DNA of 64,000 nucleotides, from the NCBI GenBank assembly GCA_904063045.1, contig CAJFCJ010000004.1, positions 1,543,713-1,607,712 on the forward strand, read 5' to 3'. This DNA comes from Dimorphilus gyrociliatus (lineage: Eukaryota > Animalia > Annelida). The position numbers were made by a program, and so were the translations under genes. The notes beneath the pieces were generated by a model. The model made no database searches. It worked only from the letters and a program-made list of their open reading frames with translations, and was not told the origin of the DNA. Positions 35,631-47,427 of this stretch are shown here, piece after piece; position 1 is the first letter of the stretch; the number at the start of each line of letters is the position of its first letter.

Positions 35631-38600
35631 TCAAGAATACATAGTTGTTTGAATAAACTGTATAGGATAAAGAGACATAATCAGATTTTTTTAATAAAAG
35701 TATATTATTACTTTTATGACCACTTGTAAATAAAAGGTGATACTTACGCAGTCAAGATCAAACTCCGCATTGCCGTAAGGAGTCCTTTGCATTTCCGTAA
35801 ATATATCTATATTTGGTAATAAATATAATTAATCCATTTAATATATTTAATATAATTTTTTTTATATTATTAAAGAAATATCTTACCGAACATTGTCTTC
35901 ATTCTAACTACGCAATGTATAAAATCGTCGAAATATATTGTTCCGTCTCTATAACTATAACGTTTCACCAGAGTGTTAAATGTTGAATTACTTATTTTAT
36001 AGCCAACTGCATGGAAAACGTTACGTAGCTCATAACTATTGAAGGTGCCGCTTCTATCCTTATCGTATTGTTTGAAAACACTCTATACATATAGAAGAAA
36101 AGAAAATTATATGAAATATCAAAGAAAGATAATTAAATTTTCTTAGAAACCTTCCACATTCTTATATCCATCCATAGTTTCTTAAATTCTTCGTAACCCA
36201 ATTTTCCAGACCTATCAACGTCCATTAGTGCAACCATGCTTCTACAAGTTTCCGAGCTAAACCCATTAAAAGTGAATTCTGTTAAGAAATTAGATAATTT
36301 TATTCAATTTCAGTACCAAAGTGATAAAATTCATTATTTTATAGATCCGAAAGAGTGAATTATAAATATGCAGCGACTTATAGAATAATAGAAACGAGAA
36401 AATGAAATTAAGACACAATATAAATAAAGAGATTCTATTCAAGAAAATATAAAGTTTTAAAGAAAGAAGACACGCTAGATGGCGTAATTAGTTGTAATAA
36501 AAATACGAATTTCTTTACCTGCTCCTATATAGGCATAGGTTGCGTTAAGGAAATCATTAAAAATAGTATAATATTATTTAATACCAAACCGTAAAATATT
36601 GAATAAACTGTATATTTAATATATATTTTTGACATTTTGCTTACCTTTCTTAAAGGCATTATCCAAAATTGCCTGCAGCTCATAGGCGTCAATCTCCAAA
36701 TCTCCTCCAGAAATGCTTCTAAAAGCTGATTTCATCAGCCGTTCCGTTTCCGTGTCAGTGATGGGCACTTGAATCTAAACGAGGTAGTCATTTGATATAA
36801 TTAGTTTCTTTAAAATTCAGGGAAAGATAGACAGATCGATTTATAAACTATGTTATTACTTGTAAAACTCTAAATATATTAATAAAGCTGCTCTAGTTAT
36901 GTTATATATTTCTTATACACATATGTGTAAATCACAAAAATAAACAATTGATTATTAAAAGATGAAAACTTAAGCGAGAACTATTTCTTTAATTAAGGGT
37001 TAGATATTAATTAGAGCTATGCTATTTAAACATTACCGTAATCCTTTTACGTTTTTTCCCATTCTATTCGTAATTAATATTAAAAAACCCGATAAAGTGA
37101 TATAATCAATAGAAAAATTAATAAATTATATAAAATATTTGCTAATTCTTCAGCGCTAATCAAACCAATAAAAACTTTATGGAAGACGTACTTTAACATC
37201 AGTCACGCAAGTTTCTTCATCTAATTCACTACAAATACGGCATGAATTAGCTCTCAATTATCATATTATAGACTGTAATTTACTTGGTGGTATTCGTTTT
37301 TTCCGAGAAGATTCTTAACAAAAATTCGGCTTCATGATTTGGCTCAAAAGTCGATGGGATAATACAATATTGGCCAGGTTTCAGCTTGTGGCGCCCACAA
37401 ACTTCCCTCATATTAATAAAGGCCGGTGACCTGGCTTGAGATTGATGGTACTTGAAAAACTGAATACCAAGAGGTTCGTTAACTGTTTCTTTCAACTGTA
37501 AGGAATAGAAAGCTGATAAAAGAACAAACCTAAAAAAAAGAAAGTATTTTCAATATAGCAAAAGTAGGGTTTTTTTTTAATAAAAAAAAAACAGAATTGT
37601 TAAGTATGTCTAATAAATAAAAATTTTTCCAATCGTACCGTACAAACAATAAAGTGAAACAGCCAGAATTTCATTTTTATAGATTAGACTTGTAGTAGCG
37701 TATAGCAATAACGTTATTGATTTTTCCATTAAATTTAAAAATGTGTATAAAAGCACTATGCTGTATAGCAATTAAAAAAAAGAGAGAAAGTCAAAGATAG
37801 CAACAAATAGGGGAGAAAAAAAGCAGAAAAATAAAAAATCAATTAAAAATTATGGGTTATAAAATGTTTAAAAACAATAAAATGCAACTTTCTTAAAAGC
37901 TATTAATTATGAAAGCTGAAATGGAAAGGGAAAAGCATTAATTAATATATCCTATACCTTGTCAGGAACCTTAAAATATATATGAGAAAAGAAAGTAAGT
38001 ACAATAAAAGAATAGAAAAAACAATAGATAAGAAAGGTTATACAACAACGTAATTAGCTTAAGAGTGAAGTGATATCAGTTTTAAAAAAATCATTATGAT
38101 TAACTTTTAAATACATTATAAATATATATATATATATATATATTTAGATAAATCTTATCAGTCTACAAACCTCGTAAATAACGTAGCCTATTGTTAGCAA
38201 ATCTTTTCCTTCTTTGCGCAACTTACGACGGCCAATTTGCATAAGTCCTATAATTATTGTACCCAGATCTTCTTCATCATCTTCATCTGGATCCGTAACT
38301 GTTACCCGATATTGAGGGTTTGTCCAAAAAGTTTCTGGTATAGAAGTATATAATATTTAAAATGATATCTTAAATATGGCGTCTTGAAGTTACCTAGAAA
38401 ATTTCTGCAACCTCCAGCATTTACGTTCTTTCTCCACGAACCATAGAGTTTAGTCCCTTCCCATTTTCTTTTGTGTTTTCTGGAATCCAATGGAGACTCT
38501 GGTCCAAGATTACAAATCTCTAATTTATGGAAAGCTTCGCAAAAGTCGTGAAATGACATCCAAAACTCTCCATCGTCATCAAAAACTAAACCGATTTTCT

Positions 38601-39858
38601 TCCTCTCAGCTTCAGAAATGAATTGCCATTCTGTTGAACCGTCACTCCATCCACCCAACCATTCAGCTTCATTTCCCCATGGATTTCGTATTCTTATCAT
38701 CGGTACCGCAACTCTCGTTGACGATTCAACTTCAACATTTCTTACTGAGGTTATACTATAAGCATGACCACATATGAGGCCATTTCGTAGCCTTGCTTCA
38801 ACTTGACCTGGAATAGCTTCGATAGAGCAACCCATCAATGAGTTTCGTTCAAAGGCTTTAGTTAATATTTTCCAAAGATTAGAGGGCCTAGTTTTAGGAC
38901 GAATATCAAACAACTCAGTAACACCCCCAGTGAAATCTTCCATAGCTTCGGCAGCGGAACCACCTCTAAGTGCCTCATAAGATCCAACAAGTTTGGCGTA
39001 CGCTTTTTCCAGAAGAGCTGTCCAAAATTCATCTGGATCTTTTGAGTGCATATACACAAGTTGACCATTGTAGGTGGGTAGGCGATCATCCACGATCACT
39101 TCAGTCCATTCACCAAAACGCCAGAAATTAAAACGAAAAACTCCGCAGTAGCCGTTACTTCTTTGAAAGTATTGATCGGGAGGTACAACCTTAAATAAAA
39201 GTTCATCGTGCAAAGTAAGACTGGCTATGGCTGCTAGCAACCAACAATCGCCCAATTCCCCCTGTTGAACGTCAAATCGACTAGCACCTTCAACAAATAA
39301 CTTGGGATTGTCGCAAATTTCCTGAAATTAAGATATATTCAAGAGTTATTCATACTAATCCATATGTTCACTTATCATAAATCTTATCTATATTAAGTTC
39401 TATATTTATTAGTTGCTTATAAATTTTTGTACTAATTATCTTCTTATAATTTATCAACTTACATGCGGTCGTTTCCATTCAATTGCTCTTTTTGGCCTTC
39501 CTTGAAAAGTCAAGCTTGAATCGGTTGCGGGAAAATCTCCATCTTCAAAGAGTCGACCTTCTCTCAAGCATTTAGATCTCACCTCATCGAAACTCTTTCC
39601 TCTCATTTCCAACGATGTATTATAATATGGTTTAATTTTTCTGTTCGATCCTCCCCATCCTTTCGAATATCTTTTTGATCTATCGAAATAGTTGGTTTGT
39701 TCTGGTGTTTGACCGTGAGAAAAACCATTATTTCCAATATTTCCACCATATCTATATATTTTTGATTCTGTCCTTTCTCCATCAGGGCTCGCGATTGTAC
39801 AAACTTCTGTAACGGTTGCGCGAACAGGGCCAATTTCAGAATAGTTAATTGAACTCAT
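35631..39858 (-). CDS. Classical calpain (CysPc, C2-like and penta-EF-hand domains), catalytically intact
   Basis: Exons 39858-39463, 39321-38394, 38334-38171, 37969-37958, 37495-37284, 37228-37192, [37063-37037], 36774-36645, [36524-36519], 36278-36151, 36082-35887, 35806-35748, 35657-35631. QQGELGDCW (Cys 39246-39244), GHAYS (His 38766-38764), RNPWG (Asn 38685-38683), EF-hands DVDRSGKL and DKDRSGTF. 5' UTR intron 39977-39878. Confidence 0.95.
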
Positions 39859-40169
39859 TCTTTCACCGTTGCACGACCTAAAATGAAAAAAGTTTTATTA
39901 TTTTAGTTTCTCTATTCTCTCATAAGTGCAAAATACTGGCCAACGGCTGCAAACCATCCGTGCACTGGCACACTTACATTTTCAGTAATGTTTTCAACAA
40001 TGACTGGTCAAGGCTAATTACAATATAGAACTTTTAATTTCTTTTGAAAGAATTTTGCTAAACTTTTATCAACTTTTTACGCTTCAAGATTATCAATTCA
40101 ACTAATGCAGCTTTATAAGGCTTAAAAAGATAGACCGAAGTCAGCTCGAGTCACGTTGTGTTGTCCCAT

Positions 40170-40275
40170 GGTCACGTGACCCGATTCTAGATTTATGAAA
40201 TATTCCCCAACGTTGACCAATCAGCTTTGTTGAAAACACTGTTCCGTTGTCTGCTCTACTTCCGTCCGCCATTTT
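40170..40275. promoter_or_regulatory. Bidirectional promoter between the calpain genes
   Basis: Perfect palindrome GGTCACGTGACC 40170-40181, a CCAAT box near 40217, YY1-like CCGCCATTTT 40266-40275. Confidence 0.55.
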
Positions 40276-40349
40276 CAAGGCAGATTAATCGAATGGAATA
40301 AGTTTTTAGAGTTTTATTTCGTTGTTTGGCGACTTTTAAAGCAAACAAT

Positions 40350-43300
40350 ATGAAAGGCAGAAAATCTGTACCATATGTAAATATACCAAACAACCTCCCG
40401 AAGCCCCAATCTGTTTCTAAAGTCTCTGTAGCAGCTCCAGAAAACTATAGGGCTGATTTAAAACCCGCCAACGTGAGAGAAGAGGATGATAAATGTGATA
40501 AGAACGTTTCTACTCCAAGTGTTATCAGAATAAACAATGCAAAGGATAAGAACGAAAACTTGTTAACCTATATTCAAGCTTTGTCTTTTGAAGATATTTG
40601 GGCTTCTTGCAAGCAGAGTAACAATCTTTTTGAAGACGTTAATTTTCCAGCTACAAATAGCTCTATATTTTGCAATTGCACATCAAAAGTAACCGTTCAA
40701 TGGCAAAGACCATCGGTAAAATTTTATTCATAAAAACAGCTTTATTTCGCATTCTAATAAAATTGCCCTTTTTAGGAAATAACAAAAAAGTTTAATCTGA
40801 AACCTGAACTGTTTGCAAGTAATACAGACACAACGCTAGCTCTGGGAAATTTTGGTTAGTTAATTAACATTCTTCAAAATGCTTGTCTTATAATTATTTA
40901 TCAATATTTATGTTTGATAAGACAAAGATAGCGAATTTTTATTCTATATTTTATTGCGTACCTGTTCTTTGTAATCTAAACGTCTGTACTAGGAACAGTG
41001 CGACGTAAAAATAGAAGGCGTTGTGTACGAACAAATGTTCATCAGCAAATATTAATTTCTTATCTCTTATCTTTTTTAATGATTAATGCTTTTACCAGGA
41101 AGTGAACTTGTGTTAAAATCAAGTAAATATTTTTCACAGGTGACAAATGGGTATTGAATGCTGCTTTAAGCCTAGTAGAAGACACAGAAGGCCTTTTCAC
41201 CATTCTACCAAGAGGGCAGAGTTTTCGCGATGAATGGTACATGGGAGCTTTTCATTTCAATTTCTTTAGAAATGGAACTTGGGAGAAGGTTCTTTTTCAT
41301 CTATTGAATTTCAAAAAGTTAATTGATAATTTCATGCTATCAATTAATCACCAGGTGACAATCGATGATCGCTTACCTACTATTGATGGAAAATTAAATT
41401 TTATTCATTCGTTCACTCCAAACGAATTCTGGGCGAGTCTACTGGAGAAAGCTTACGCAAAGTTAGATAATACTTAGATATATTCTTTATTAGTTCAAGA
41501 ACTTATTACGTGGGTTTTATTTAGGTTTCACGGTAGCTATGAGGCTATGAAAAGTTGTTCTTTTGAGGAAACCTTACACCATTTAACAGGAGGGACAGTG
41601 ATAACTCACAAGTACAAATCTTAACATTTCGTTTTTTATCTTGAGAATATTTAACTAAAGGTTTAATTTATTGCTCATAGTATGGCAGATCTTGATACTA
41701 CTTCTTTGGACGATATAATATTTCAGTCGATAGAATGTAATTGCAAAATTCTTTGTTCAATCATGGTATTTATTCTCACATCTCTTCTAATGTTATTTTA
41801 ATTAACCTCCTCGTATTTTCTTAATATAAGGCCGATGGTCGGAAATGGAACGAGCTACTTAGCAATGGGTTCGTTGCTGAAAGAATGTATGCTATTTTGG
41901 ATATAAGAGGAGTAAGCTTTATATTATGCAAATTTAGAGATAAGTTACAAAAAATTTATATGTAAATATTTTTATTTTCATAGATTAAATTGACAAGAGA
42001 TGATATAGTAAAGCCAGTTACTCTTGTCAAACTAAAGAGTACTGATGGTTTGAGGCTAGAGTGGTCAGGTGCCTGGAATTCTCAGTAAGTTTATTGTTTC
42101 CTTCTAGATAATAAAATAAATAATAGCCGCTTAATAGATGAGATTATACCTTTTTGCATAGTATTATATATGAATTTATAAAGAATTTTTGCCTACAGTT
42201 CTCCTGAATGGCGTAATATTCGATCTGGAGACAAGGAAAAATTAGAATTAACAATAGACAATCACTCTGAAACCTGGTATGTAAACTAAATATTTATATA
42301 AAGTAGATTTATTGGTTGTTATCGATTTGGTGCAAATTTATTACGTGTAACGTGCATTGGTAAAGTCAAAAACATACCAAACTAACCAAACGTTCTCCTT
42401 TAATTAAATAATCAAACATTTTTGTTTAATTCTTTTATCTGAGAAAAAACAATAAGAGAATTACGTCAACAAGAGAATCATTGATAATAACAATAGCTGT
42501 GATGTCAAATAGAGCCTAACACTATTGACAAACAAAAAACTACTCCTTGCAAAAAGTTTTAAGATAACGAACTTTTTTTTAAATTTATTTAGGATTGAAA
42601 TACACGACTTTTATAAGATCTTTACTTCTCTATATGTGTGCTATCCAACCGCTAATCCGTCTACTTTTGGTTCTAAAATGCTAAATAAAGTACAAGAATT
42701 CGAAGGACAATGGTTAAATGGTGTTACTGCTGGGGGACGACCCACTTGTATGGGTATGAAGGCTTAGAAAATATATTAATAAAAATATGTAATTAAAAAT
42801 AATTAAATTAATTTTATAGACTCTTTTTGGGTGAATCCACAATTTGAAGTTAAAGTCCAAAATTCCCCAAAGGGTGGGGCTTTCTTCATAGTTGACTTAA
42901 TACAAAATGACAATCGGCTCATACGCCACAAAGCTCGAATAAATAACGTTGTCGGCATTGCATTATATCAGGTACTTATAAACAGGAACTAGCTTTTTTT
43001 TATTGTTGGTTTTCAAGTAAAGCCTACGTATTAACATTTGACACAGGTCCCCGAGACAACACATGGACGAAAGCTACCGAGAGAGTTCTTCAGAAATAAT
43101 TCCTACTACGCTCGAACTCGGTACTACTCTAATAACTCCCAGGTTCTAAAATCCTCTTATTTACATTTTTACACGTGTTTTCGTTTACAATGTGGTAACT
43201 GGTGAACAGGTGGTACTAAATGCCAATTTAGCAAAGGGTACTTATATCGTTATACCGAGTACATACGATCCTAATCAAGAAGGAGAGTTTATCTTACGAC

Positions 43301-44203
43301 TCGTATATGACGAAGAAAATAACATAGAAATTCGGTTAGTTCTTTAAAGCAATTAATTAGTTAATCCATCGAATAAACATTCTATTCATACTCTATTCAT
43401 TCTCCGACAGACAATTAGGAGATGTAATAAACGTTTCGTATGACATGTTTAATTGTATGCCAAATACTACGTATGACTTAAGAAATAAGTTTCTTGAACT
43501 TTCTGGAGAGGTAAGACCTCACATCTAATGCATTTGCATCTTTTAACTTGCTCTTTCACTGCAGGAGATGAAAATCAACGCTTTTCAACTGGCAACTTTA
43601 TTCTGCGAGCTAAAGCTTAAAGGTAACATTAGTAACACATATCAAATTCCATTCGTAAATCTTTCCTCCGCTAACAGACTTTCAAGCAGACGTTGAAATT
43701 TGTAAAAGTCTTCTATTACTATCAAGAGTATGATTTCATTATCGTATTTGAGTCATTTAACCAATTTATGTATTTGTTACAGCATACATCTGGATATTGT
43801 GATTTCAATGATTTTCTCTTGATTTTCGGCATTTTGTCGTTGTTGATGGTTAGCATTCTCCTTCTTTTCAAACATATCTTATTTCTAATCCAGTATTAAT
43901 TATTAACAATATTTAATTGTCAATAGGAAATATTTACAAGTACTGGAAAGTCATTGAACAAGAAAATTACGGGATATGAATTGGTAGATCTTTGTGAAAA
44001 GTTAGGTAAGCTACTCTTTATGTTCTAAAGTATATTATGTAATAATATGTCTATTCAAAATAGGCCACATCGTTCCTGAGAAGTTTCTGATGGAATCTCT
44101 TTGGAAGTTCACTGACGAGGAAACTAGATTATCATGCGGCAATTTCATTCGCTTTGTATGTTTTTTTACAAGTACATTCTCTGAAGAGCGGAATTCGGCA
44201 TAA
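40350..44203 (+). CDS. Calpain-like pseudo-protease (catalytic triad lost), 19 exons, open reading frame
   Basis: Exons 40350-40715, 40776-40854, 41140-41288, 41355-41461, 41525-41611, 41681-41765, 41831-41911, 41984-42084, 42199-42276, 42593-42753, 42820-42971, 43047-43142, 43210-43334, 43411-43510, 43565-43622, 43678-43727, 43783-43848, 43927-44005, 44064-44203. Retains [55 protein letters not shown]. Confidence 0.88.
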
Positions 44204-44967
44204 GTTGTTTCTTTATTCTTTTTTTTTTGTTCCAATGACTTCCGAACGCCCTAAATCGCCAATAAGAGATTTTGGGTGTAGTAAATATTTTGTTTTTTTT
44301 TTTTTGTTCAAAAGTATTCGCCTGAGGCTATACAGTCTAAACTAAGGTGCTTTAAACAGTATTGTTCAAGCAAAAGTGTCTTCTTTTCTTTGTATACGTT
44401 TAAATCTGTTAAGTTAAATTTATCAGAATTAATATCTTGCCATTATTGTTACATGCTTAAAAAGAAAATAATGAAAAAAATATATATAAGTACTTTATTG
44501 AGTTCACAAAATACATCTTATTATGTAATGTAACATTGTTCAATTAACTATTATTCTTTCAATTTGTATTAGTGATTGAATAATACAAATATAGATAAAT
44601 TAAGATCTATATTTTAAAATTTAGATGATTAACAAAGAAAGAATGATTATTCTATTTCAATGCATTTTACAACGTTTCTTCCCTAAAATAGGAAGAAGGA
44701 AAAATATCCGAAAACGTAGTTCAAAACAGCTAATGCAAAGTTAGTGAAATCTTTAGAACAAACATTTACTGAAGCCGAGTACGTGTGAAGTGAATTTACT
44801 ATTTTCATAATATTGATGCTATTATTTGAACCGATTGAACAGTTTTTTTTATATATATATTCTTTATAACTCTGCAGGACATAAAAAGAACTGATTGATG
44901 GAAGATGTCTATTGTCTTCTTTTCTTGTAAAAAACAAGAGGAAAGAGGATTCTTTCTGTATTTCCAT

Positions 44968-45537
44968 CTAGTAAAAAGATAAATCGGTGTCCTTTTCCTT
45001 TTGATAAATTTCTTCACCGTCTCTATCAAGGAATAATAGGACAGCGGTAGTCAATTGTAAAACTAACGATCCCCATGCTATACCATAAGACCAACTAAAC
45101 ATCCACTTTGATGAGATTTTCTTGCGTTCTTCACTATCTGTCTCTTTTAGAAAGGAGACGGTAAAAACTATCAAACCGATTAAGAGAAGAGTTGATGAGA
45201 CTATATTAGTATAGAAGGCAAATCTGTACAAAGTATATTTAGTGTCGGTTAATTTCACCAATCCAATTGCACTAAGTAATGCAGCTATAAAACATAAGAA
45301 TAAACTAATAATGCACAGCGAAGCGGTGGCATTTATCCAACCCTTACTACCATCTCTACTACAGGTTTCGTTGTTACTTTTCACTGAGCACTCTTGCCAA
45401 AGACCTTGCTTGTAATTATCGGCTTCAAGCCATGCAGGGCTCACCAGAGAGACGATCAAAAGCAATAGAGCGATGACCGACGAGACAAAGGACAGAAACT
45501 TAAACGGTCGTATAACGGTAACAATCCGGGAATCCAT
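44968..45537 (-). CDS. TMEM47: TMEM47-like PMP22/claudin-superfamily tetraspan protein, 189 aa, single exon
   Basis: Four hydrophobic segments, SPAWL, GLWQEC..C extracellular motif, FSWSYGIAWG. Confidence 0.85.
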   Translation of the reverse strand: MDSRIVTVIRPFKFLSFVSSVIALLLLIVSLVSPAWLEADNYKQGLWQECSVKSNNETCSRDGSKGWINATASLCIISLFLCFIAALLSAIGLVKLTDTKYTLYRFAFYTNIVSSTLLLIGLIVFTVSFLKETDSEERKKISSKWMFSWSYGIAWGSLVLQLTTAVLLFLDRDGEEIYQKEKDTDLSFY

Positions 45538-47427
45538 AAATTCCGAGTGTTATGTTTTTATCCGGGAATTCTCTTTCGATCGATCACAGTAAACGTACGG
45601 CACAGGTAGGGGAGAAAATCGATCGATGAGTGCTGCGCAACTACTTCCTTCCTTTTATCAGCCGCCTATCAGACCAAAAATTTTTTCCCGAATAAATAAA
45701 ACAGCTCTAGGTATATTCTGTTATTATAATAACAAGGCCAATTGGCAGCAACCACTCACTATTTGTATTTGTATATCGTAAAGGAAAAACTTTACAACAC
45801 TCCAGCGCCATCTATCGCAGTTCTATGTTATTCTTCAATTGTTGAAGAGGCGTCAATCCGATGACGCGATTAAATTGGTAATTAGGTCAAACTAAACGGT
45901 AATTAGAGTGTACGAAGCATGTATTTAGGAATTTATCGCTTTTTACATGTGAAGTTGTCATGAAACATAGAAAATAATTAGAAATTCGATGATCATTTAA
46001 GTGACGCAGTTTAAAAGTTTGATAAAGGACGAAAAAAAAGTGAAGTAGGGAATAAAAAGGCGAAAACAAATCTATATTCTGTCTCACGTTTCCGTTTGAC
46101 GAGTGTATCGGACGAGATGATGTAAGAGATCGATTCCTACAAAGTATACACTCGCTCTTTTTTTTTCTTGTACATACGGCGTTCGTTCGGAATCGACGCC
46201 CTTGCAAACATATGGCGACGTCGACCATAAACAGCTGGTGCACAATTTACCGGCTCACTTACTCAAGTACCACTTATAGGCGCAGCGCCATACTGCAAGC
46301 ATTCAAATCTCCATAGCTATAAACATAAGCCGGAAAGAGACGTCGCCGGGCTAATTAAAAATATTGTAGGTGGAGTCGGCGGGTAGACGCCCTGGGCAAG
46401 GTCGGCCGGCTTTTACGACGATTCGATCGTGCTGAGCTAATAACGACCGAATTTGGAACCGTTAACTTTCACCTGCGCGTCTCTTGCGTCAAAATCGCGT
46501 GCTTATGTAGGTAAGGATGAAAAGAGTGGAAACGCGTGCGCATCATTCGCAACCTGCTCGCTTCTCAGTAACGCCCTTTTCACTCGACCGACGCCGGGTT
46601 GTTTGCCGCGGTATGCCGGTTTTATGCAGGTCAATCACGACCGCCATGTTGCAGTTCAATGAAGCGCACTGTTTGCCAGCAAATGGTCTGAGCGTCATGG
46701 CGACGATACGTGTTTGCTTGCCTCATGCATATTTATTTGACGAGTCATTCATCTCTAATCTCATTTCCATATCGAGTGGCGTTGATTAAGCGAGTGAGAC
46801 GTAAGACAGGTGTTGCGTAGAAAATACAGTCACACCCATCGTTTTCTATTGTTGTTCGATGCTGCGTAATAATAGCAGCGATCATCTCATAATGCGGAAA
46901 AAGTGCTCTGTATTATATCCCTATTTTAAGTATTGTTCTTCTAGAACGGTAAGGCCCGAGAGACGCCACCAGCTGGTAGCATCTACCCCCGAGCGTTGCT
47001 CGGTAGGACGCCGTACCGCTACAAAACTTTTCCAGTCATTCATTATCTCGCCGCGAAAAACTTGCGGCCCCTAAGACTAATTAGCGACTGGGGGAGACGC
47101 CATGGCATTTAACATTCCTTCGAATTCGCGTGATTCGATGGAAAGAGACGCCTCTCAACGAACGTCGTTTGCGGCTCAGTAATTGCTAAAACGCGCGCCT
47201 TTAATTGCTGCTCAACGCCTTCGCTAATCAACCTCTTCCTGTCGAACGAGCCCCTCGTGATGTCACACGAATGACGTCCTTCCATTGGTTAAACACCAAC
47301 CAATCAGCGTTCGACGTGGCTCATAACGCGTGGCAGCTGCTGTCTTCCCATGTGGGTTAGAACTGCTTGAATAAGTGAGTTATTGCGAGATAAGCGTCGT
47401 TTACAATTAATCTGAAATCGCAGCGAT

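What the first reader, a model, noticed from the sequence alone, without database searches (positions are those of the whole stretch)
35631..44203. Head-to-head active calpain and fully triad-dead calpain
The two ATGs are 491 bp apart on opposite strands. In the plus-strand paralog all three catalytic positions are replaced: Cys to Lys (GDKW, 41145-41147), His to Arg (AERMY, 41882-41884) and Asn to Ser (KSTDG, 42038-42040). Its EF-hands are degenerate, yet 19 exons stay in frame with conserved structural motifs, so it looks like a maintained pseudo-enzyme rather than a pseudogene. Cys-to-Lys is known in vertebrate CAPN6 and full triad loss in Drosophila CalpC. A shared promoter suggests a co-expressed protease plus regulator or partner module, possibly replacing a small subunit or inhibitor.
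Basis: partly seen in the sequence, partly recalled or inferred. Interest (0 to 1): 0.75.

Follow-up and report, generated by a model that had tools for sequence, protein, structure and literature searches.

The report
Dead calpain paired with active calpain
Two calpain protease genes sit head-to-head 491 bp apart in a tiny worm genome; one has lost every catalytic residue yet stays intact, and the same gene pairing occurs in a clam and a sea slug, so it is an old pair whose second member here became a non-enzyme.

Summary
The minus-strand gene (10 exons, 758 aa) is an intact classical calpain. The plus-strand gene (19 GT-AG exons, 719 aa, no stop or frameshift) carries Lys, Arg and Ser at the Cys, His and Asn positions. 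It has also lost the oxyanion Gln, the NPW Trp, two conserved core Ca-site columns, the EF2/EF3 loops and the whole fifth EF-hand. The start codons are 491 bp apart.

The two genes are not recent duplicates. Trees and an AU test (p=0.0002) put the active gene in classical family A (CalpA/B type). The dead gene falls in the protostome clade that holds Aplysia AplCCal5/6 ("family C"), on a branch about six times the median length.

Other members of this clade have also lost catalytic residues: Paralvinella, three expressed transcripts under strong purifying selection, octopus and planorbid snails.

The same family-A/family-C head-to-head arrangement occurs in Mactra (3.0 kb) and Aplysia (3.8 kb). 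It was not found within 10 kb in four other spiralians.

It is most likely a maintained pseudo-protease. Coupling with its neighbour is plausible but untested. A small-subunit-like role through EF5 pairing is disfavoured. Dead calpains are already known, and the scan noted others in this genome.

The parts
35631..39858 (-). Active classical calpain gene (family A, CalpA/B type), 758 aa, 10 exons
   Evidence: Exons 39858-39463, 39321-38394, 38334-38171, 37495-37284, 37228-37192, 36774-36645, 36278-36151, 36082-35887, 35806-35748, 35657-35631. Pfam Peptidase_C2 E=5.6e-112, Calpain_III and EF-hand hits. 54-58% identical to oyster and clam calpain-B-like proteins. Cys/His/Asn intact. Best PDB matches are calpain-1/2.
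39859..40349 (.). 491-bp region between the two start codons (candidate bidirectional promoter)
   Evidence: Coordinates. GC is 0.36, against 0.23-0.26 in the introns of the two genes. Promoter function is not shown.
40171..40180 (.). Palindromic E-box GTCACGTGAC inside the shared intergenic region
   Evidence: The only copy in the 64-kb window; 0.01 expected by chance. A CCAAT box at 40217 and a GCCATnTT (YY1-like) match at 40268 lie nearby. These are motif matches only.
40350..44203 (+). Triad-dead classical calpain gene (family C clade), 719 aa, 19 exons
   Evidence: Exons 40350-40715, 40776-40854, 41140-41288, 41355-41461, 41525-41611, 41681-41765, 41831-41911, 41984-42084, 42199-42276, 42593-42753, 42820-42971, 43047-43142, 43210-43334, 43411-43510, 43565-43622, 43678-43727, 43783-43848, 43927-44005, 44064-44203, all AG/GT. 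Single exons reach Pfam cut-offs for Peptidase_C2 (29.5 and 39.5 bits) and Calpain_III (25.4 and 35.9 bits).
40842..40844 (+). Leu145 at the oxyanion-hole Gln position (Q-G-x-L-G-D-C-W)
   Evidence: Column at least 92% Gln in 25 active calpains; Leu here. Codon read.
40827..40835 (+). Asp140 and Thr142 replace the conserved Arg and Asp of the R-x-D motif before the active site
   Evidence: Both columns are at least 92% conserved in active calpains. From my memory of the mu-calpain core structure these are the Arg of the Arg-Glu switch and a Ca-site-1 Asp; that assignment was not checked with a tool.
41145..41147 (+). Lys151 at the catalytic Cys position
41882..41884 (+). Arg309 at the catalytic His position (flanks also changed, G308E and A310M)
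42038..42046 (+). Ser337-Thr338-Asp339 in place of Asn-Pro-Trp
44064..44203 (+). Last exon: ends just after the EF4 helix, stop TAA at 44201-44203, no EF5
   Evidence: Three-frame reading. A tblastn of the C-terminal 70 aa of 11 calpains against 44000-47000 finds only the EF4 part of this exon.

Best explanation
The plus-strand gene encodes a maintained, catalytically dead classical calpain (a pseudo-protease). It belongs to the protostome clade that contains Aplysia AplCCal5/6, which Hastings et al. call classical family C. It lies in an anciently conserved head-to-head pair with a family-A (CalpA/B-type) active calpain.

Shown here:
- The triad, the oxyanion Gln and the NPW Trp are all replaced.
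- The CysPc scaffold and the C2-like domain III are kept.
- The penta-EF-hand domain is degenerate and lacks EF5.
- The ORF and all 18 introns are intact.
- The gene is the only member of its clade in this genome.
- The same family pairing and orientation occur in a bivalve and a gastropod.

Inferred:
- The protein works by binding rather than cutting. It would use the calpain fold to hold substrates or partners, as a scaffold, decoy or stabiliser. It is probably insensitive to Ca2+ at the usual sites.
- The most likely partner or target pathway is that of the family-A calpain(s). The two genes would be transcribed from the shared 491-bp region. I put this last step at about 0.3.
- Any association would have to use surfaces other than the EF5-EF5 pairing of vertebrate calpain subunits.
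For: - Gene models and substitutions.
- Scaffold kept: 89 of 135 near-invariant columns are retained at about 32% overall identity, and losses cluster on catalytic and Ca positions.
- Coding signature: exon GC 0.37 against intron 0.26, GC1>GC2>GC3 as in the neighbour, and 0 in-frame stops against 54 and 66 out of frame.
- Clade membership at SH-aLRT 99-100 in four trees, with a terminal branch of 2.5-3.0 against a median of about 0.45.
- An AU test rejects a clade of plus with minus and its close paralog (p=0.00017).
- Dead relatives in the same clade: Paralvinella (Tyr/Lys at Cys/His); Logan transcripts P0199, P0290 and P0291 (Ser/Gln), which lie on intron-less cDNA-like contigs with pN 0.13-0.19 against saturated pS 0.75-0.81; octopus (Cys to Ser); Bulinus and Biomphalaria (Cys to Phe).
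- Synteny: in Mactra a family-A gene is divergent from the family-C gene at 3.0 kb. In Aplysia a family-A first exon is divergent from AplCCal5 at 3.8 kb.
- Literature: dead calpains have roles in vivo, and Drosophila CalpC is reported to bind CalpA/B (PMC11387712). Two calpain large subunits stabilise each other in G-calpain, and an inactive C105S subunit still supports its partner (PMC2912385). No small subunit is known in invertebrates (PMC5650170).
Against: - No expression, binding or activity data for this gene were available.
- dN/dS on the gene's own branch cannot be measured, because synonymous sites are saturated against every relative.
- EF5, the known pairing element of classical calpains, is missing.
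- No family-A exon lies within 10 kb upstream of the orthologous gene in Owenia, Paralvinella, Gigantopelta or Octopus. The pairing is therefore not universal, or it lies beyond the flank I could fetch.
- A 491-bp spacing is ordinary for a genome with about 209 genes per Mb.
- The exact sister group of the gene inside its clade changes between trees.
Confidence: 0.6

Rival explanations
1. The gene is a maintained pseudo-protease, but its adjacency to the active calpain is only a frozen relic of an ancient inverted duplication. It acts independently of the neighbour, for example as a cytoskeletal or signalling scaffold in the way reported for vertebrate CAPN6.
For: The two genes belong to families that split before the spiralian radiation. 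The arrangement is absent within 10 kb in four of the six other species with enough upstream flank to judge. EF5 is missing. The short spacing is normal in this genome. The intergenic E-box is not shared with Mactra or Aplysia.
Against: The same orientation and the same family pairing survive in an annelid, a bivalve and a gastropod. That is hard to get without some constraint. My rough estimate is that two of about 15 calpain loci among roughly 15,000 genes would be neighbours by chance only about 0.01-0.02 times per genome. Drosophila CalpC is reported to bind CalpA/B.
Confidence: 0.3
2. The plus-strand gene is a non-functional pseudogene that happens still to be open, and the apparent exons are an artefact of flexible splicing models.
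For: All catalytic residues are gone and the branch is very long. Exons are short, so a homology-guided aligner has some freedom to avoid stops. There is no direct expression evidence.
Against: Every exon aligns to calpain templates in a single frame, with homology continuous across all 18 junctions and canonical GT-AG sites. On a branch of about 2.5-3 replacements per site, neutral decay should have produced many stops and frameshifts, and none is seen (inference). 66% of near-invariant columns are kept. The exon/intron GC contrast is preserved. Dead relatives in other annelids are expressed and constrained.
Confidence: 0.07
3. The protein keeps some enzymatic activity through a non-canonical active site.
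For: None beyond the retained fold.
Against: The Cys, His, Asn, oxyanion Gln and NPW Trp are all replaced, by Lys, Arg, Ser, Leu and Asp. Calpains with even a single Cys-to-Ser change are treated as inactive in the literature.
Confidence: 0.03

Closest known systems
Lophotrochozoan 'classical calpain family C' (Aplysia AplCCal4-6; Hastings et al. 2017, PMC5650170), labelled 'calpain-9-like' by NCBI's automatic naming
   Same: Same clade in four trees here (SH-aLRT 99-100). P0184 and P0301 are AplCCal5 and AplCCal6 by accession. Same CysPc + C2L + PEF layout. Same head-to-head neighbour of family A in Aplysia and Mactra.
   Different: The paper states that lophotrochozoan members keep the catalytic triad. 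This gene has lost all of it plus EF5, and sits on a branch about six times longer than its relatives. In my trees vertebrate CAPN9 is not in this clade, so the 'calpain-9' label is only a name.
Drosophila Calpain C (CalpC)
   Same: A classical-type calpain without catalytic residues. It is reported to bind the active CalpA and CalpB. Hastings et al. use it to define family C.
   Different: The link between CalpC and the lophotrochozoan clade rests on a bootstrap of 36 in that paper. I had no CalpC sequence from a tool and could not test it. Two dead Aedes calpains that I did test fall inside the arthropod A/B clade and are mosquito-specific.
Dead annelid relatives: Paralvinella palmiformis KAK2162664.1 (P0215) and Logan transcripts P0199, P0290 and P0291
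   Same: Same clade, and dead at the Cys and His positions. They share odd residues with the window gene, such as Ser-Cys after G-S-Y-E and C-K-S-L-L-L-L in the PEF domain. They grouped with it in one tree (SH-aLRT 83).
   Different: They keep the Asn, the NPW Trp and EF5, and carry other replacements (Tyr/Lys, Ser/Gln). Identity to the window gene is only 31-33%. In other trees the window gene sits elsewhere in the clade, so shared ancestry of the inactivation is unresolved.
Vertebrate CAPN6
   Same: A naturally non-proteolytic calpain regarded as a structural element.
   Different: CAPN6 is of the Tra-3/CAPN5 type with a C-terminal C2 domain, not a PEF calpain. It is unrelated within the family. 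This genome has its own dead CAPN5/6-type genes elsewhere (loci L009, L010, L012).
G-calpain (CAPN8/CAPN9 complex)
   Same: A precedent that two calpain large subunits form a complex and stabilise each other, and that an inactive subunit can still support its partner.
   Different: Both natural subunits are active and have full PEF domains. Their genes are not orthologous to this pair.

Membership tests
Calpain superfamily (CysPc, Pfam PF00648) | Sequence match to the calpain protease core | tested here: met
   Exons 3 and 4 alone score 29.5 and 39.5 bits against a cut-off of 23.8. The genome scan gives the same result. PDB matches to calpain-8/2/1 cores at E=1e-17 to 1e-18.
Calpain superfamily (active protease) | Catalytic Cys, His, Asn, plus oxyanion Gln | tested here: not met
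   Lys151, Arg309, Ser337, Leu145. The neighbour on the minus strand meets all four.
Classical (PEF) calpains | C2-like domain III after the core | tested here: met
   Calpain_III PF01067 scores 25.4 and 35.9 bits for exons 11 and 13, against a cut-off of 21.
Classical (PEF) calpains | C-terminal penta-EF-hand domain with five EF-hands, EF5 used for pairing | tested here: not met
   Exons 14-19 align to EF1-EF4 of templates. Conserved loop residues are replaced. The two PEF exons scanned had no Pfam EF-hand hit. The ORF stops after EF4 and no EF5 exon lies downstream.
Classical calpain family C (Hastings et al. 2017) | Falls in one clade with Aplysia AplCCal4-6 | tested here: met
   Clade of 18-24 rows including AplCCal5 (P0184) at SH-aLRT 99-100. 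Accessions matched.
Classical calpain family C (Hastings et al. 2017) | Same clade as Drosophila CalpC | not tested
   No CalpC sequence was obtained from a tool. The paper's own support is a bootstrap of 36.
Maintained pseudoenzyme | Intact reading frame and splice sites despite long divergence | tested here: met
   19 exons, all GT-AG, no internal stop. Terminal branch 2.5-3.0 substitutions per site.
Maintained pseudoenzyme | Purifying selection (dN/dS well below 1) on its own lineage | tested here: inconclusive
   Against the nearest relatives pS is saturated (0.77-0.87) and pN is 0.47, so no branch-specific estimate is possible. Among the three dead transcripts of other species the constraint is clear (pN 0.13-0.19).
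Maintained pseudoenzyme | Expression | not testable with these tools
   Looking up the spliced product in transcript collections needs the joined sequence, which was not sent to any database tool.
Conserved bidirectional gene pair | Divergent orientation with a short shared upstream region | tested here: met
   491 bp between the ATGs.
Conserved bidirectional gene pair | Same two orthologous genes divergent in distant species | tested here: met
   Mactra at 3.0 kb and Aplysia at 3.8 kb. Not seen within 10 kb in Owenia, Paralvinella, Gigantopelta or Octopus. Lingula could not be judged because the scaffold ends 1.3 kb upstream.
Conserved bidirectional gene pair | Co-expression from a shared promoter | not testable with these tools
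   No expression or CAGE data are at hand. Only motif matches were found.

The most novel reading that the evidence does not exclude
Family-A and family-C classical calpains form an ancient bidirectional gene pair, at least as old as the mollusc-annelid ancestor, that encodes the two halves of an invertebrate two-large-subunit calpain. The essential job of the C partner would be non-catalytic (stabiliser or regulator of the A partner). That would explain why it has lost its active site again and again: in this worm, Paralvinella and allied annelids, cephalopods, planorbid snails, and possibly insect CalpC. The window gene would be the most reduced example of such a regulatory subunit.
Probability: 0.2. 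Interest if true: 0.7.

Novelty: new member of a known kind. Interest (0 to 1): 0.45.

Why it matters
Catalytically dead calpains are known (CAPN6, CalpC, several insect lineages), but what they do is mostly unknown. This locus adds three things that can be tested.

First, lophotrochozoan family-C calpains were described as all keeping the triad. They have in fact lost it in several lineages.

Second, this genome's only family-C gene is a stripped-down version: no triad, no Ca sites, no EF5. Whatever function remains does not need them.

Third, the divergent pairing with a family-A calpain is shared by an annelid and two molluscs. That gives a concrete candidate partner.

The species has a small genome and published CAGE, ATAC and RNA-seq data. 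Co-expression, and knock-down of each member of the pair, would be a direct way to ask how a pseudo-calpain acts.

Tried and rejected
1. Recent inverted duplication of the neighbour. Rejected: 30% identity, 18 against 9 introns, different clades, and AU p=0.00017.

2. Orthology to vertebrate CAPN9, as the automatic names suggest. Not supported: CAPN9 groups with the vertebrate classical calpains.

3. Aedes dead calpains P0104 and P0035 as stand-ins for CalpC. They sit inside arthropod A/B, and their nearest relatives are mosquito calpain-B-like proteins. They say nothing about CalpC.

4. Finding the gene's own annotated protein or a close ortholog. The large HMMER search with the 108-aa open stretch gave at best 45-62% identity over the matched stretches. 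Two profile searches listed only the best 120 hits and did not reach it.

5. Counting residues shared exclusively with the dead annelid group gave 4, against 0-2 for control groups. The count is biased, because three of the four group members are close kin, so I give it no weight.

6. RSCU correlation with the neighbour was uninformative in this AT-rich genome: an out-of-frame reading scored higher.

7. Looking for a family-C remnant beside the neighbour's close paralog on contig 17 found none, but only 1.5 kb upstream was in the fetched piece.

8. The first AU test script got no answer from the script machine. The AU test was rerun on a smaller 28-row set built.

9. The shared E-box is not present in the Mactra or Aplysia intergenic regions.
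Full report
**What is there**

The window lies on contig 4 of a 77.9-Mb, 349-contig eukaryotic assembly. Introns here are mostly 54-78 nt. These figures fit the published description of the annelid Dimorphilus gyrociliatus: about 350 scaffolds, median intron 66 bp, 209 genes per Mb (PMC7854359). That identification is an inference, because no tool names the genome.

I built gene models with a homology-guided spliced aligner that I wrote in the sandbox. I checked every junction by eye.

- The minus-strand gene has 10 exons (39858 down to 35631) and encodes 758 aa.
- The plus-strand gene has 19 exons (40350 to 44203) and encodes 719 aa.
- All introns are GT-AG, and neither model has an internal stop.
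- The start codons are separated by 491 bp.

**The two proteins**

The minus gene is an ordinary active classical calpain.

- Pfam finds Peptidase_C2 (E=5.6e-112), Calpain_III and EF-hands.
- It is 54-58% identical to clam and oyster calpain-B-like proteins.
- It has a 77%-identical paralog on contig 17.

The plus gene is much more divergent. It is about 30-34% identical to every calpain I could compare, including its neighbour (30% over 617 aa).

Single exons still pass the Pfam cut-offs for Peptidase_C2 and Calpain_III. I aligned it with 25 active calpains and found 135 columns that are at least 92% identical among them. The plus protein keeps 89 of these. The losses are not random. They include:

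- the oxyanion Gln (Leu145);
- the Cys (Lys151);
- Gly-His-Ala (Glu-Arg-Met, 308-310);
- Asn-Pro-Trp (Ser-Thr-Asp, 337-339);
- the Arg and Asp of the R-x-D motif before the active site (Asp140, Thr142);
- acidic residues of the EF2 and EF3 loops.

From my memory of the mu-calpain core structure, the R-x-D Arg and Asp are the Arg of the Arg-Glu switch and a Ca-site-1 ligand. I did not check that assignment with a tool.

The reading frame stops right after the EF4 helix, and no EF5-like exon lies in the next 2.8 kb. The protein therefore keeps the calpain scaffold. It lacks the chemistry, much of the Ca2+ machinery, and the EF-hand that classical calpains use for subunit pairing.

**Gene or pseudogene**

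- The CDS has no in-frame stop, against 54 and 66 in the other two frames.
- Exon GC is 0.37 and intron GC is 0.26. This matches the contrast and the GC1>GC2>GC3 order of the active neighbour.
- The terminal branch in four trees is 2.5-3.0 replacements per site, against a median of about 0.45.

Neutral decay over such a distance should have produced many stops and frameshifts, and none is present. That argument is an inference, but I regard it as strong.

A branch-specific dN/dS is not obtainable. Synonymous sites are saturated against all relatives (pS 0.77-0.87, pN 0.47).

**Family placement**

The large HMMER search with the longest open stretch of the plus gene and two profile word searches gave the reference set.

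- In all trees the plus gene falls in a protostome clade of 18-24 rows (SH-aLRT 99-100).
- This clade is labelled "calpain-9-like" by automatic annotation. It includes Owenia, Paralvinella, nemerteans, Lingula, Priapulus, flatworms and many molluscs.
- The minus gene falls in the CalpA/B clade with Lingula calpain-A and oyster calpain-B-like.
- An AU test rejects a clade of plus with minus and its paralog (delta lnL 52.7, p=0.00017).
- Intron numbers also differ: 18 against 9.

The two Aplysia members of the plus clade, P0184 and P0301, are AplCCal5 and AplCCal6 by accession. Hastings et al. (PMC5650170) assign these to "classical family C", the group they define by Drosophila CalpC (bootstrap 36). 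They assign AplCCal1 to family A.

So the pair in the window is one family-A gene and one family-C gene. They are ancient paralogs, not a local duplication. The plus gene is the only family-C member among the roughly 14 calpain loci that I modelled in this genome. Vertebrate CAPN9 is not in this clade.

**Loss of catalysis is recurrent in this clade**

Hastings et al. wrote that lophotrochozoan family-C members keep the triad. The sequences returned here show exceptions:

- Paralvinella palmiformis: Tyr and Lys at the Cys and His positions;
- three Logan transcripts, P0199, P0290 and P0291: Ser and Gln;
- Octopus and a second cephalopod-like transcript: Cys to Ser;
- Bulinus and Biomphalaria: Cys to Phe.

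The three Logan sequences sit on intron-less contigs of 2.2-4.1 kb from sequencing runs, which is what transcripts look like. Among them pN is 0.13-0.19 while pS is saturated at 0.75-0.81. Triad-dead members of this clade can therefore be expressed and strongly constrained.

Whether the window gene shares its inactivation with these annelid sequences is open.

- It grouped with them in one tree (SH-aLRT 83).
- It grouped with Schistosoma, or stayed unresolved, in others.
- The catalytic replacements differ between them.

**The head-to-head arrangement is old**

In the bivalve Mactra antiquata, the family-C gene (P0180, plus strand from 10001 of locus L020) has a calpain on the opposite strand directly upstream.

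- That neighbour's first exon runs 6992 to 6549 and is identical to P0331 residues 1-148.
- P0331 is 54% identical to the window's minus gene and ends with the same F-I-Q-T-T-M-Y-S.
- The spacing is 3.0 kb.

In Aplysia, a first exon of a calpain-B-like protein lies on the minus strand at 6188-5610 of L021. It is 65-67% identical to the oyster protein over the conserved parts. It sits 3.8 kb upstream of AplCCal5.

The accession numbers of AplCCal1 and AplCCal5 are two apart. This is consistent with their being neighbours, though I could not confirm it with the AplCCal1 sequence.

No family-A exon is found within 10 kb upstream of the orthologous gene in Owenia, Paralvinella, Gigantopelta or Octopus. 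In Lingula the scaffold ends 1.3 kb upstream.

The simplest reading is that the divergent A/C pair predates the mollusc-annelid split. It would then have been kept in some lineages, and broken or stretched in others.

**How it most likely works**

Shown: a calpain-fold protein without a catalytic centre, kept intact, in a conserved divergent pair with an active calpain.

Inferred: it acts by binding, as scaffold, decoy or stabiliser. Three literature points make the family-A calpain pathway the most likely context.

- Drosophila CalpC is reported to bind CalpA and CalpB, and dead calpains give phenotypes in Rhodnius (PMC11387712).
- CAPN8 and CAPN9 stabilise each other, and an inactive CAPN8 still supports CAPN9 (PMC2912385).
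- Invertebrates have no known small subunit.

Against a small-subunit-like role, the window protein lacks EF5. Any complex would need another interface.

A 491-bp spacing alone means little in a genome this dense.

The shared region holds the window's only GTCACGTGAC palindrome (0.01 expected), a CCAAT box and a YY1-like match. These are motif matches only, and the palindrome is not shared with the mollusc loci.

**Novelty and context**

Dead calpains are a known kind. This genome has several others:

- two CAPN5/6-type genes with Gly at the Cys position (L009, L010);
- one with a C2 domain and Ser/Gln (L012);
- one very divergent gene with nothing left of the triad (L013).

Earlier notes of this scan on other pieces of the genome describe such genes.

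What I did not find in the papers searched is:

- the repeated loss of the triad within lophotrochozoan family C;
- the extreme reduction of this copy;
- the conserved head-to-head A/C arrangement.

**Limits**

The joined (spliced) protein models were used only inside sandbox scripts, for BLAST, alignments and trees. They were not sent to the protein collections, the transcript index, the protein atlas or the structure predictor, where only exon-by-exon references were used. The own-genome annotation, expression of this gene and a fold prediction are therefore missing.

All trees are quick searches. The plus gene is a long branch, so only its family-level placement should be trusted.

Noticed in passing
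window 37037-37063 (minus strand): A 27-nt stretch in the 416-nt linker intron of the active calpain is flanked by AG and GT. It reads in phase as N-G-K-K-R-K-R-I-T, so it could be an optional basic micro-exon, as another note of the scan proposes. The gene model closes in frame without it.
   Followed up: partly
window 40171-40180, 40217, 40268: The shared intergenic region holds the window's only GTCACGTGAC palindrome. From memory this matches the TFE/MITF-type CLEAR E-box consensus. A CCAAT box and a GCCATnTT match lie nearby. The palindrome is not present in the Mactra or Aplysia intergenic regions.
   Followed up: partly
window 41289-41354: Intron 3 of the dead calpain is 66 nt, in frame and free of stops. 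Retention would insert 22 residues in the protease core without breaking the frame.
   Followed up: no
L009 (G000:C9:2550000-2559000), L010 (C4:2156000-2165000), L012 (C8:1075000-1084000), L013 (C5:4310500-4319500): The same genome has at least four more calpain homologs without a catalytic Cys. Two are CAPN5/6-type genes with Gly/Phe or Gly/Leu at Cys/His. One is a C2-domain type with Ser/Gln. One is very divergent with all three residues gone. These are rough aligner models only.
   Followed up: partly
L002 (G000:C17:660500-669500): A close paralog (77% identity) of the window's active calpain lies on contig 17 and has a similar intron-poor structure. No family-C exon was seen in the 1.5 kb of upstream sequence fetched.
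   Followed up: partly
window 44971-45549 (minus strand): A long open exon encodes a four-helix membrane protein of claudin/PMP22 appearance. It is convergent with the dead calpain, and its 3' end must lie within a few hundred bases of the calpain stop codon.
   Followed up: no
L021 (Aplysia KB941882.1) 10001-40319: AplCCal5 and AplCCal6, both family C, are convergent neighbours 9.4 kb apart. Together with the family-A first exon upstream, this makes at least three classical calpain genes in about 40 kb.
   Followed up: partly
P0104, P0035 and relatives (Aedes, Armigeres, Ochlerotatus): Culicine mosquitoes carry their own dead calpains lacking the G-D-C-W motif. Their nearest relatives are mosquito calpain-B-like proteins (37-38% identity). 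This looks like one more independent loss of catalysis.
   Followed up: partly
P0063 (Bombina bombina XP_053568535.1): An amphibian calpain-like protein has Arg at the catalytic Cys position and a long acidic repeat inserted in the core.
   Followed up: no
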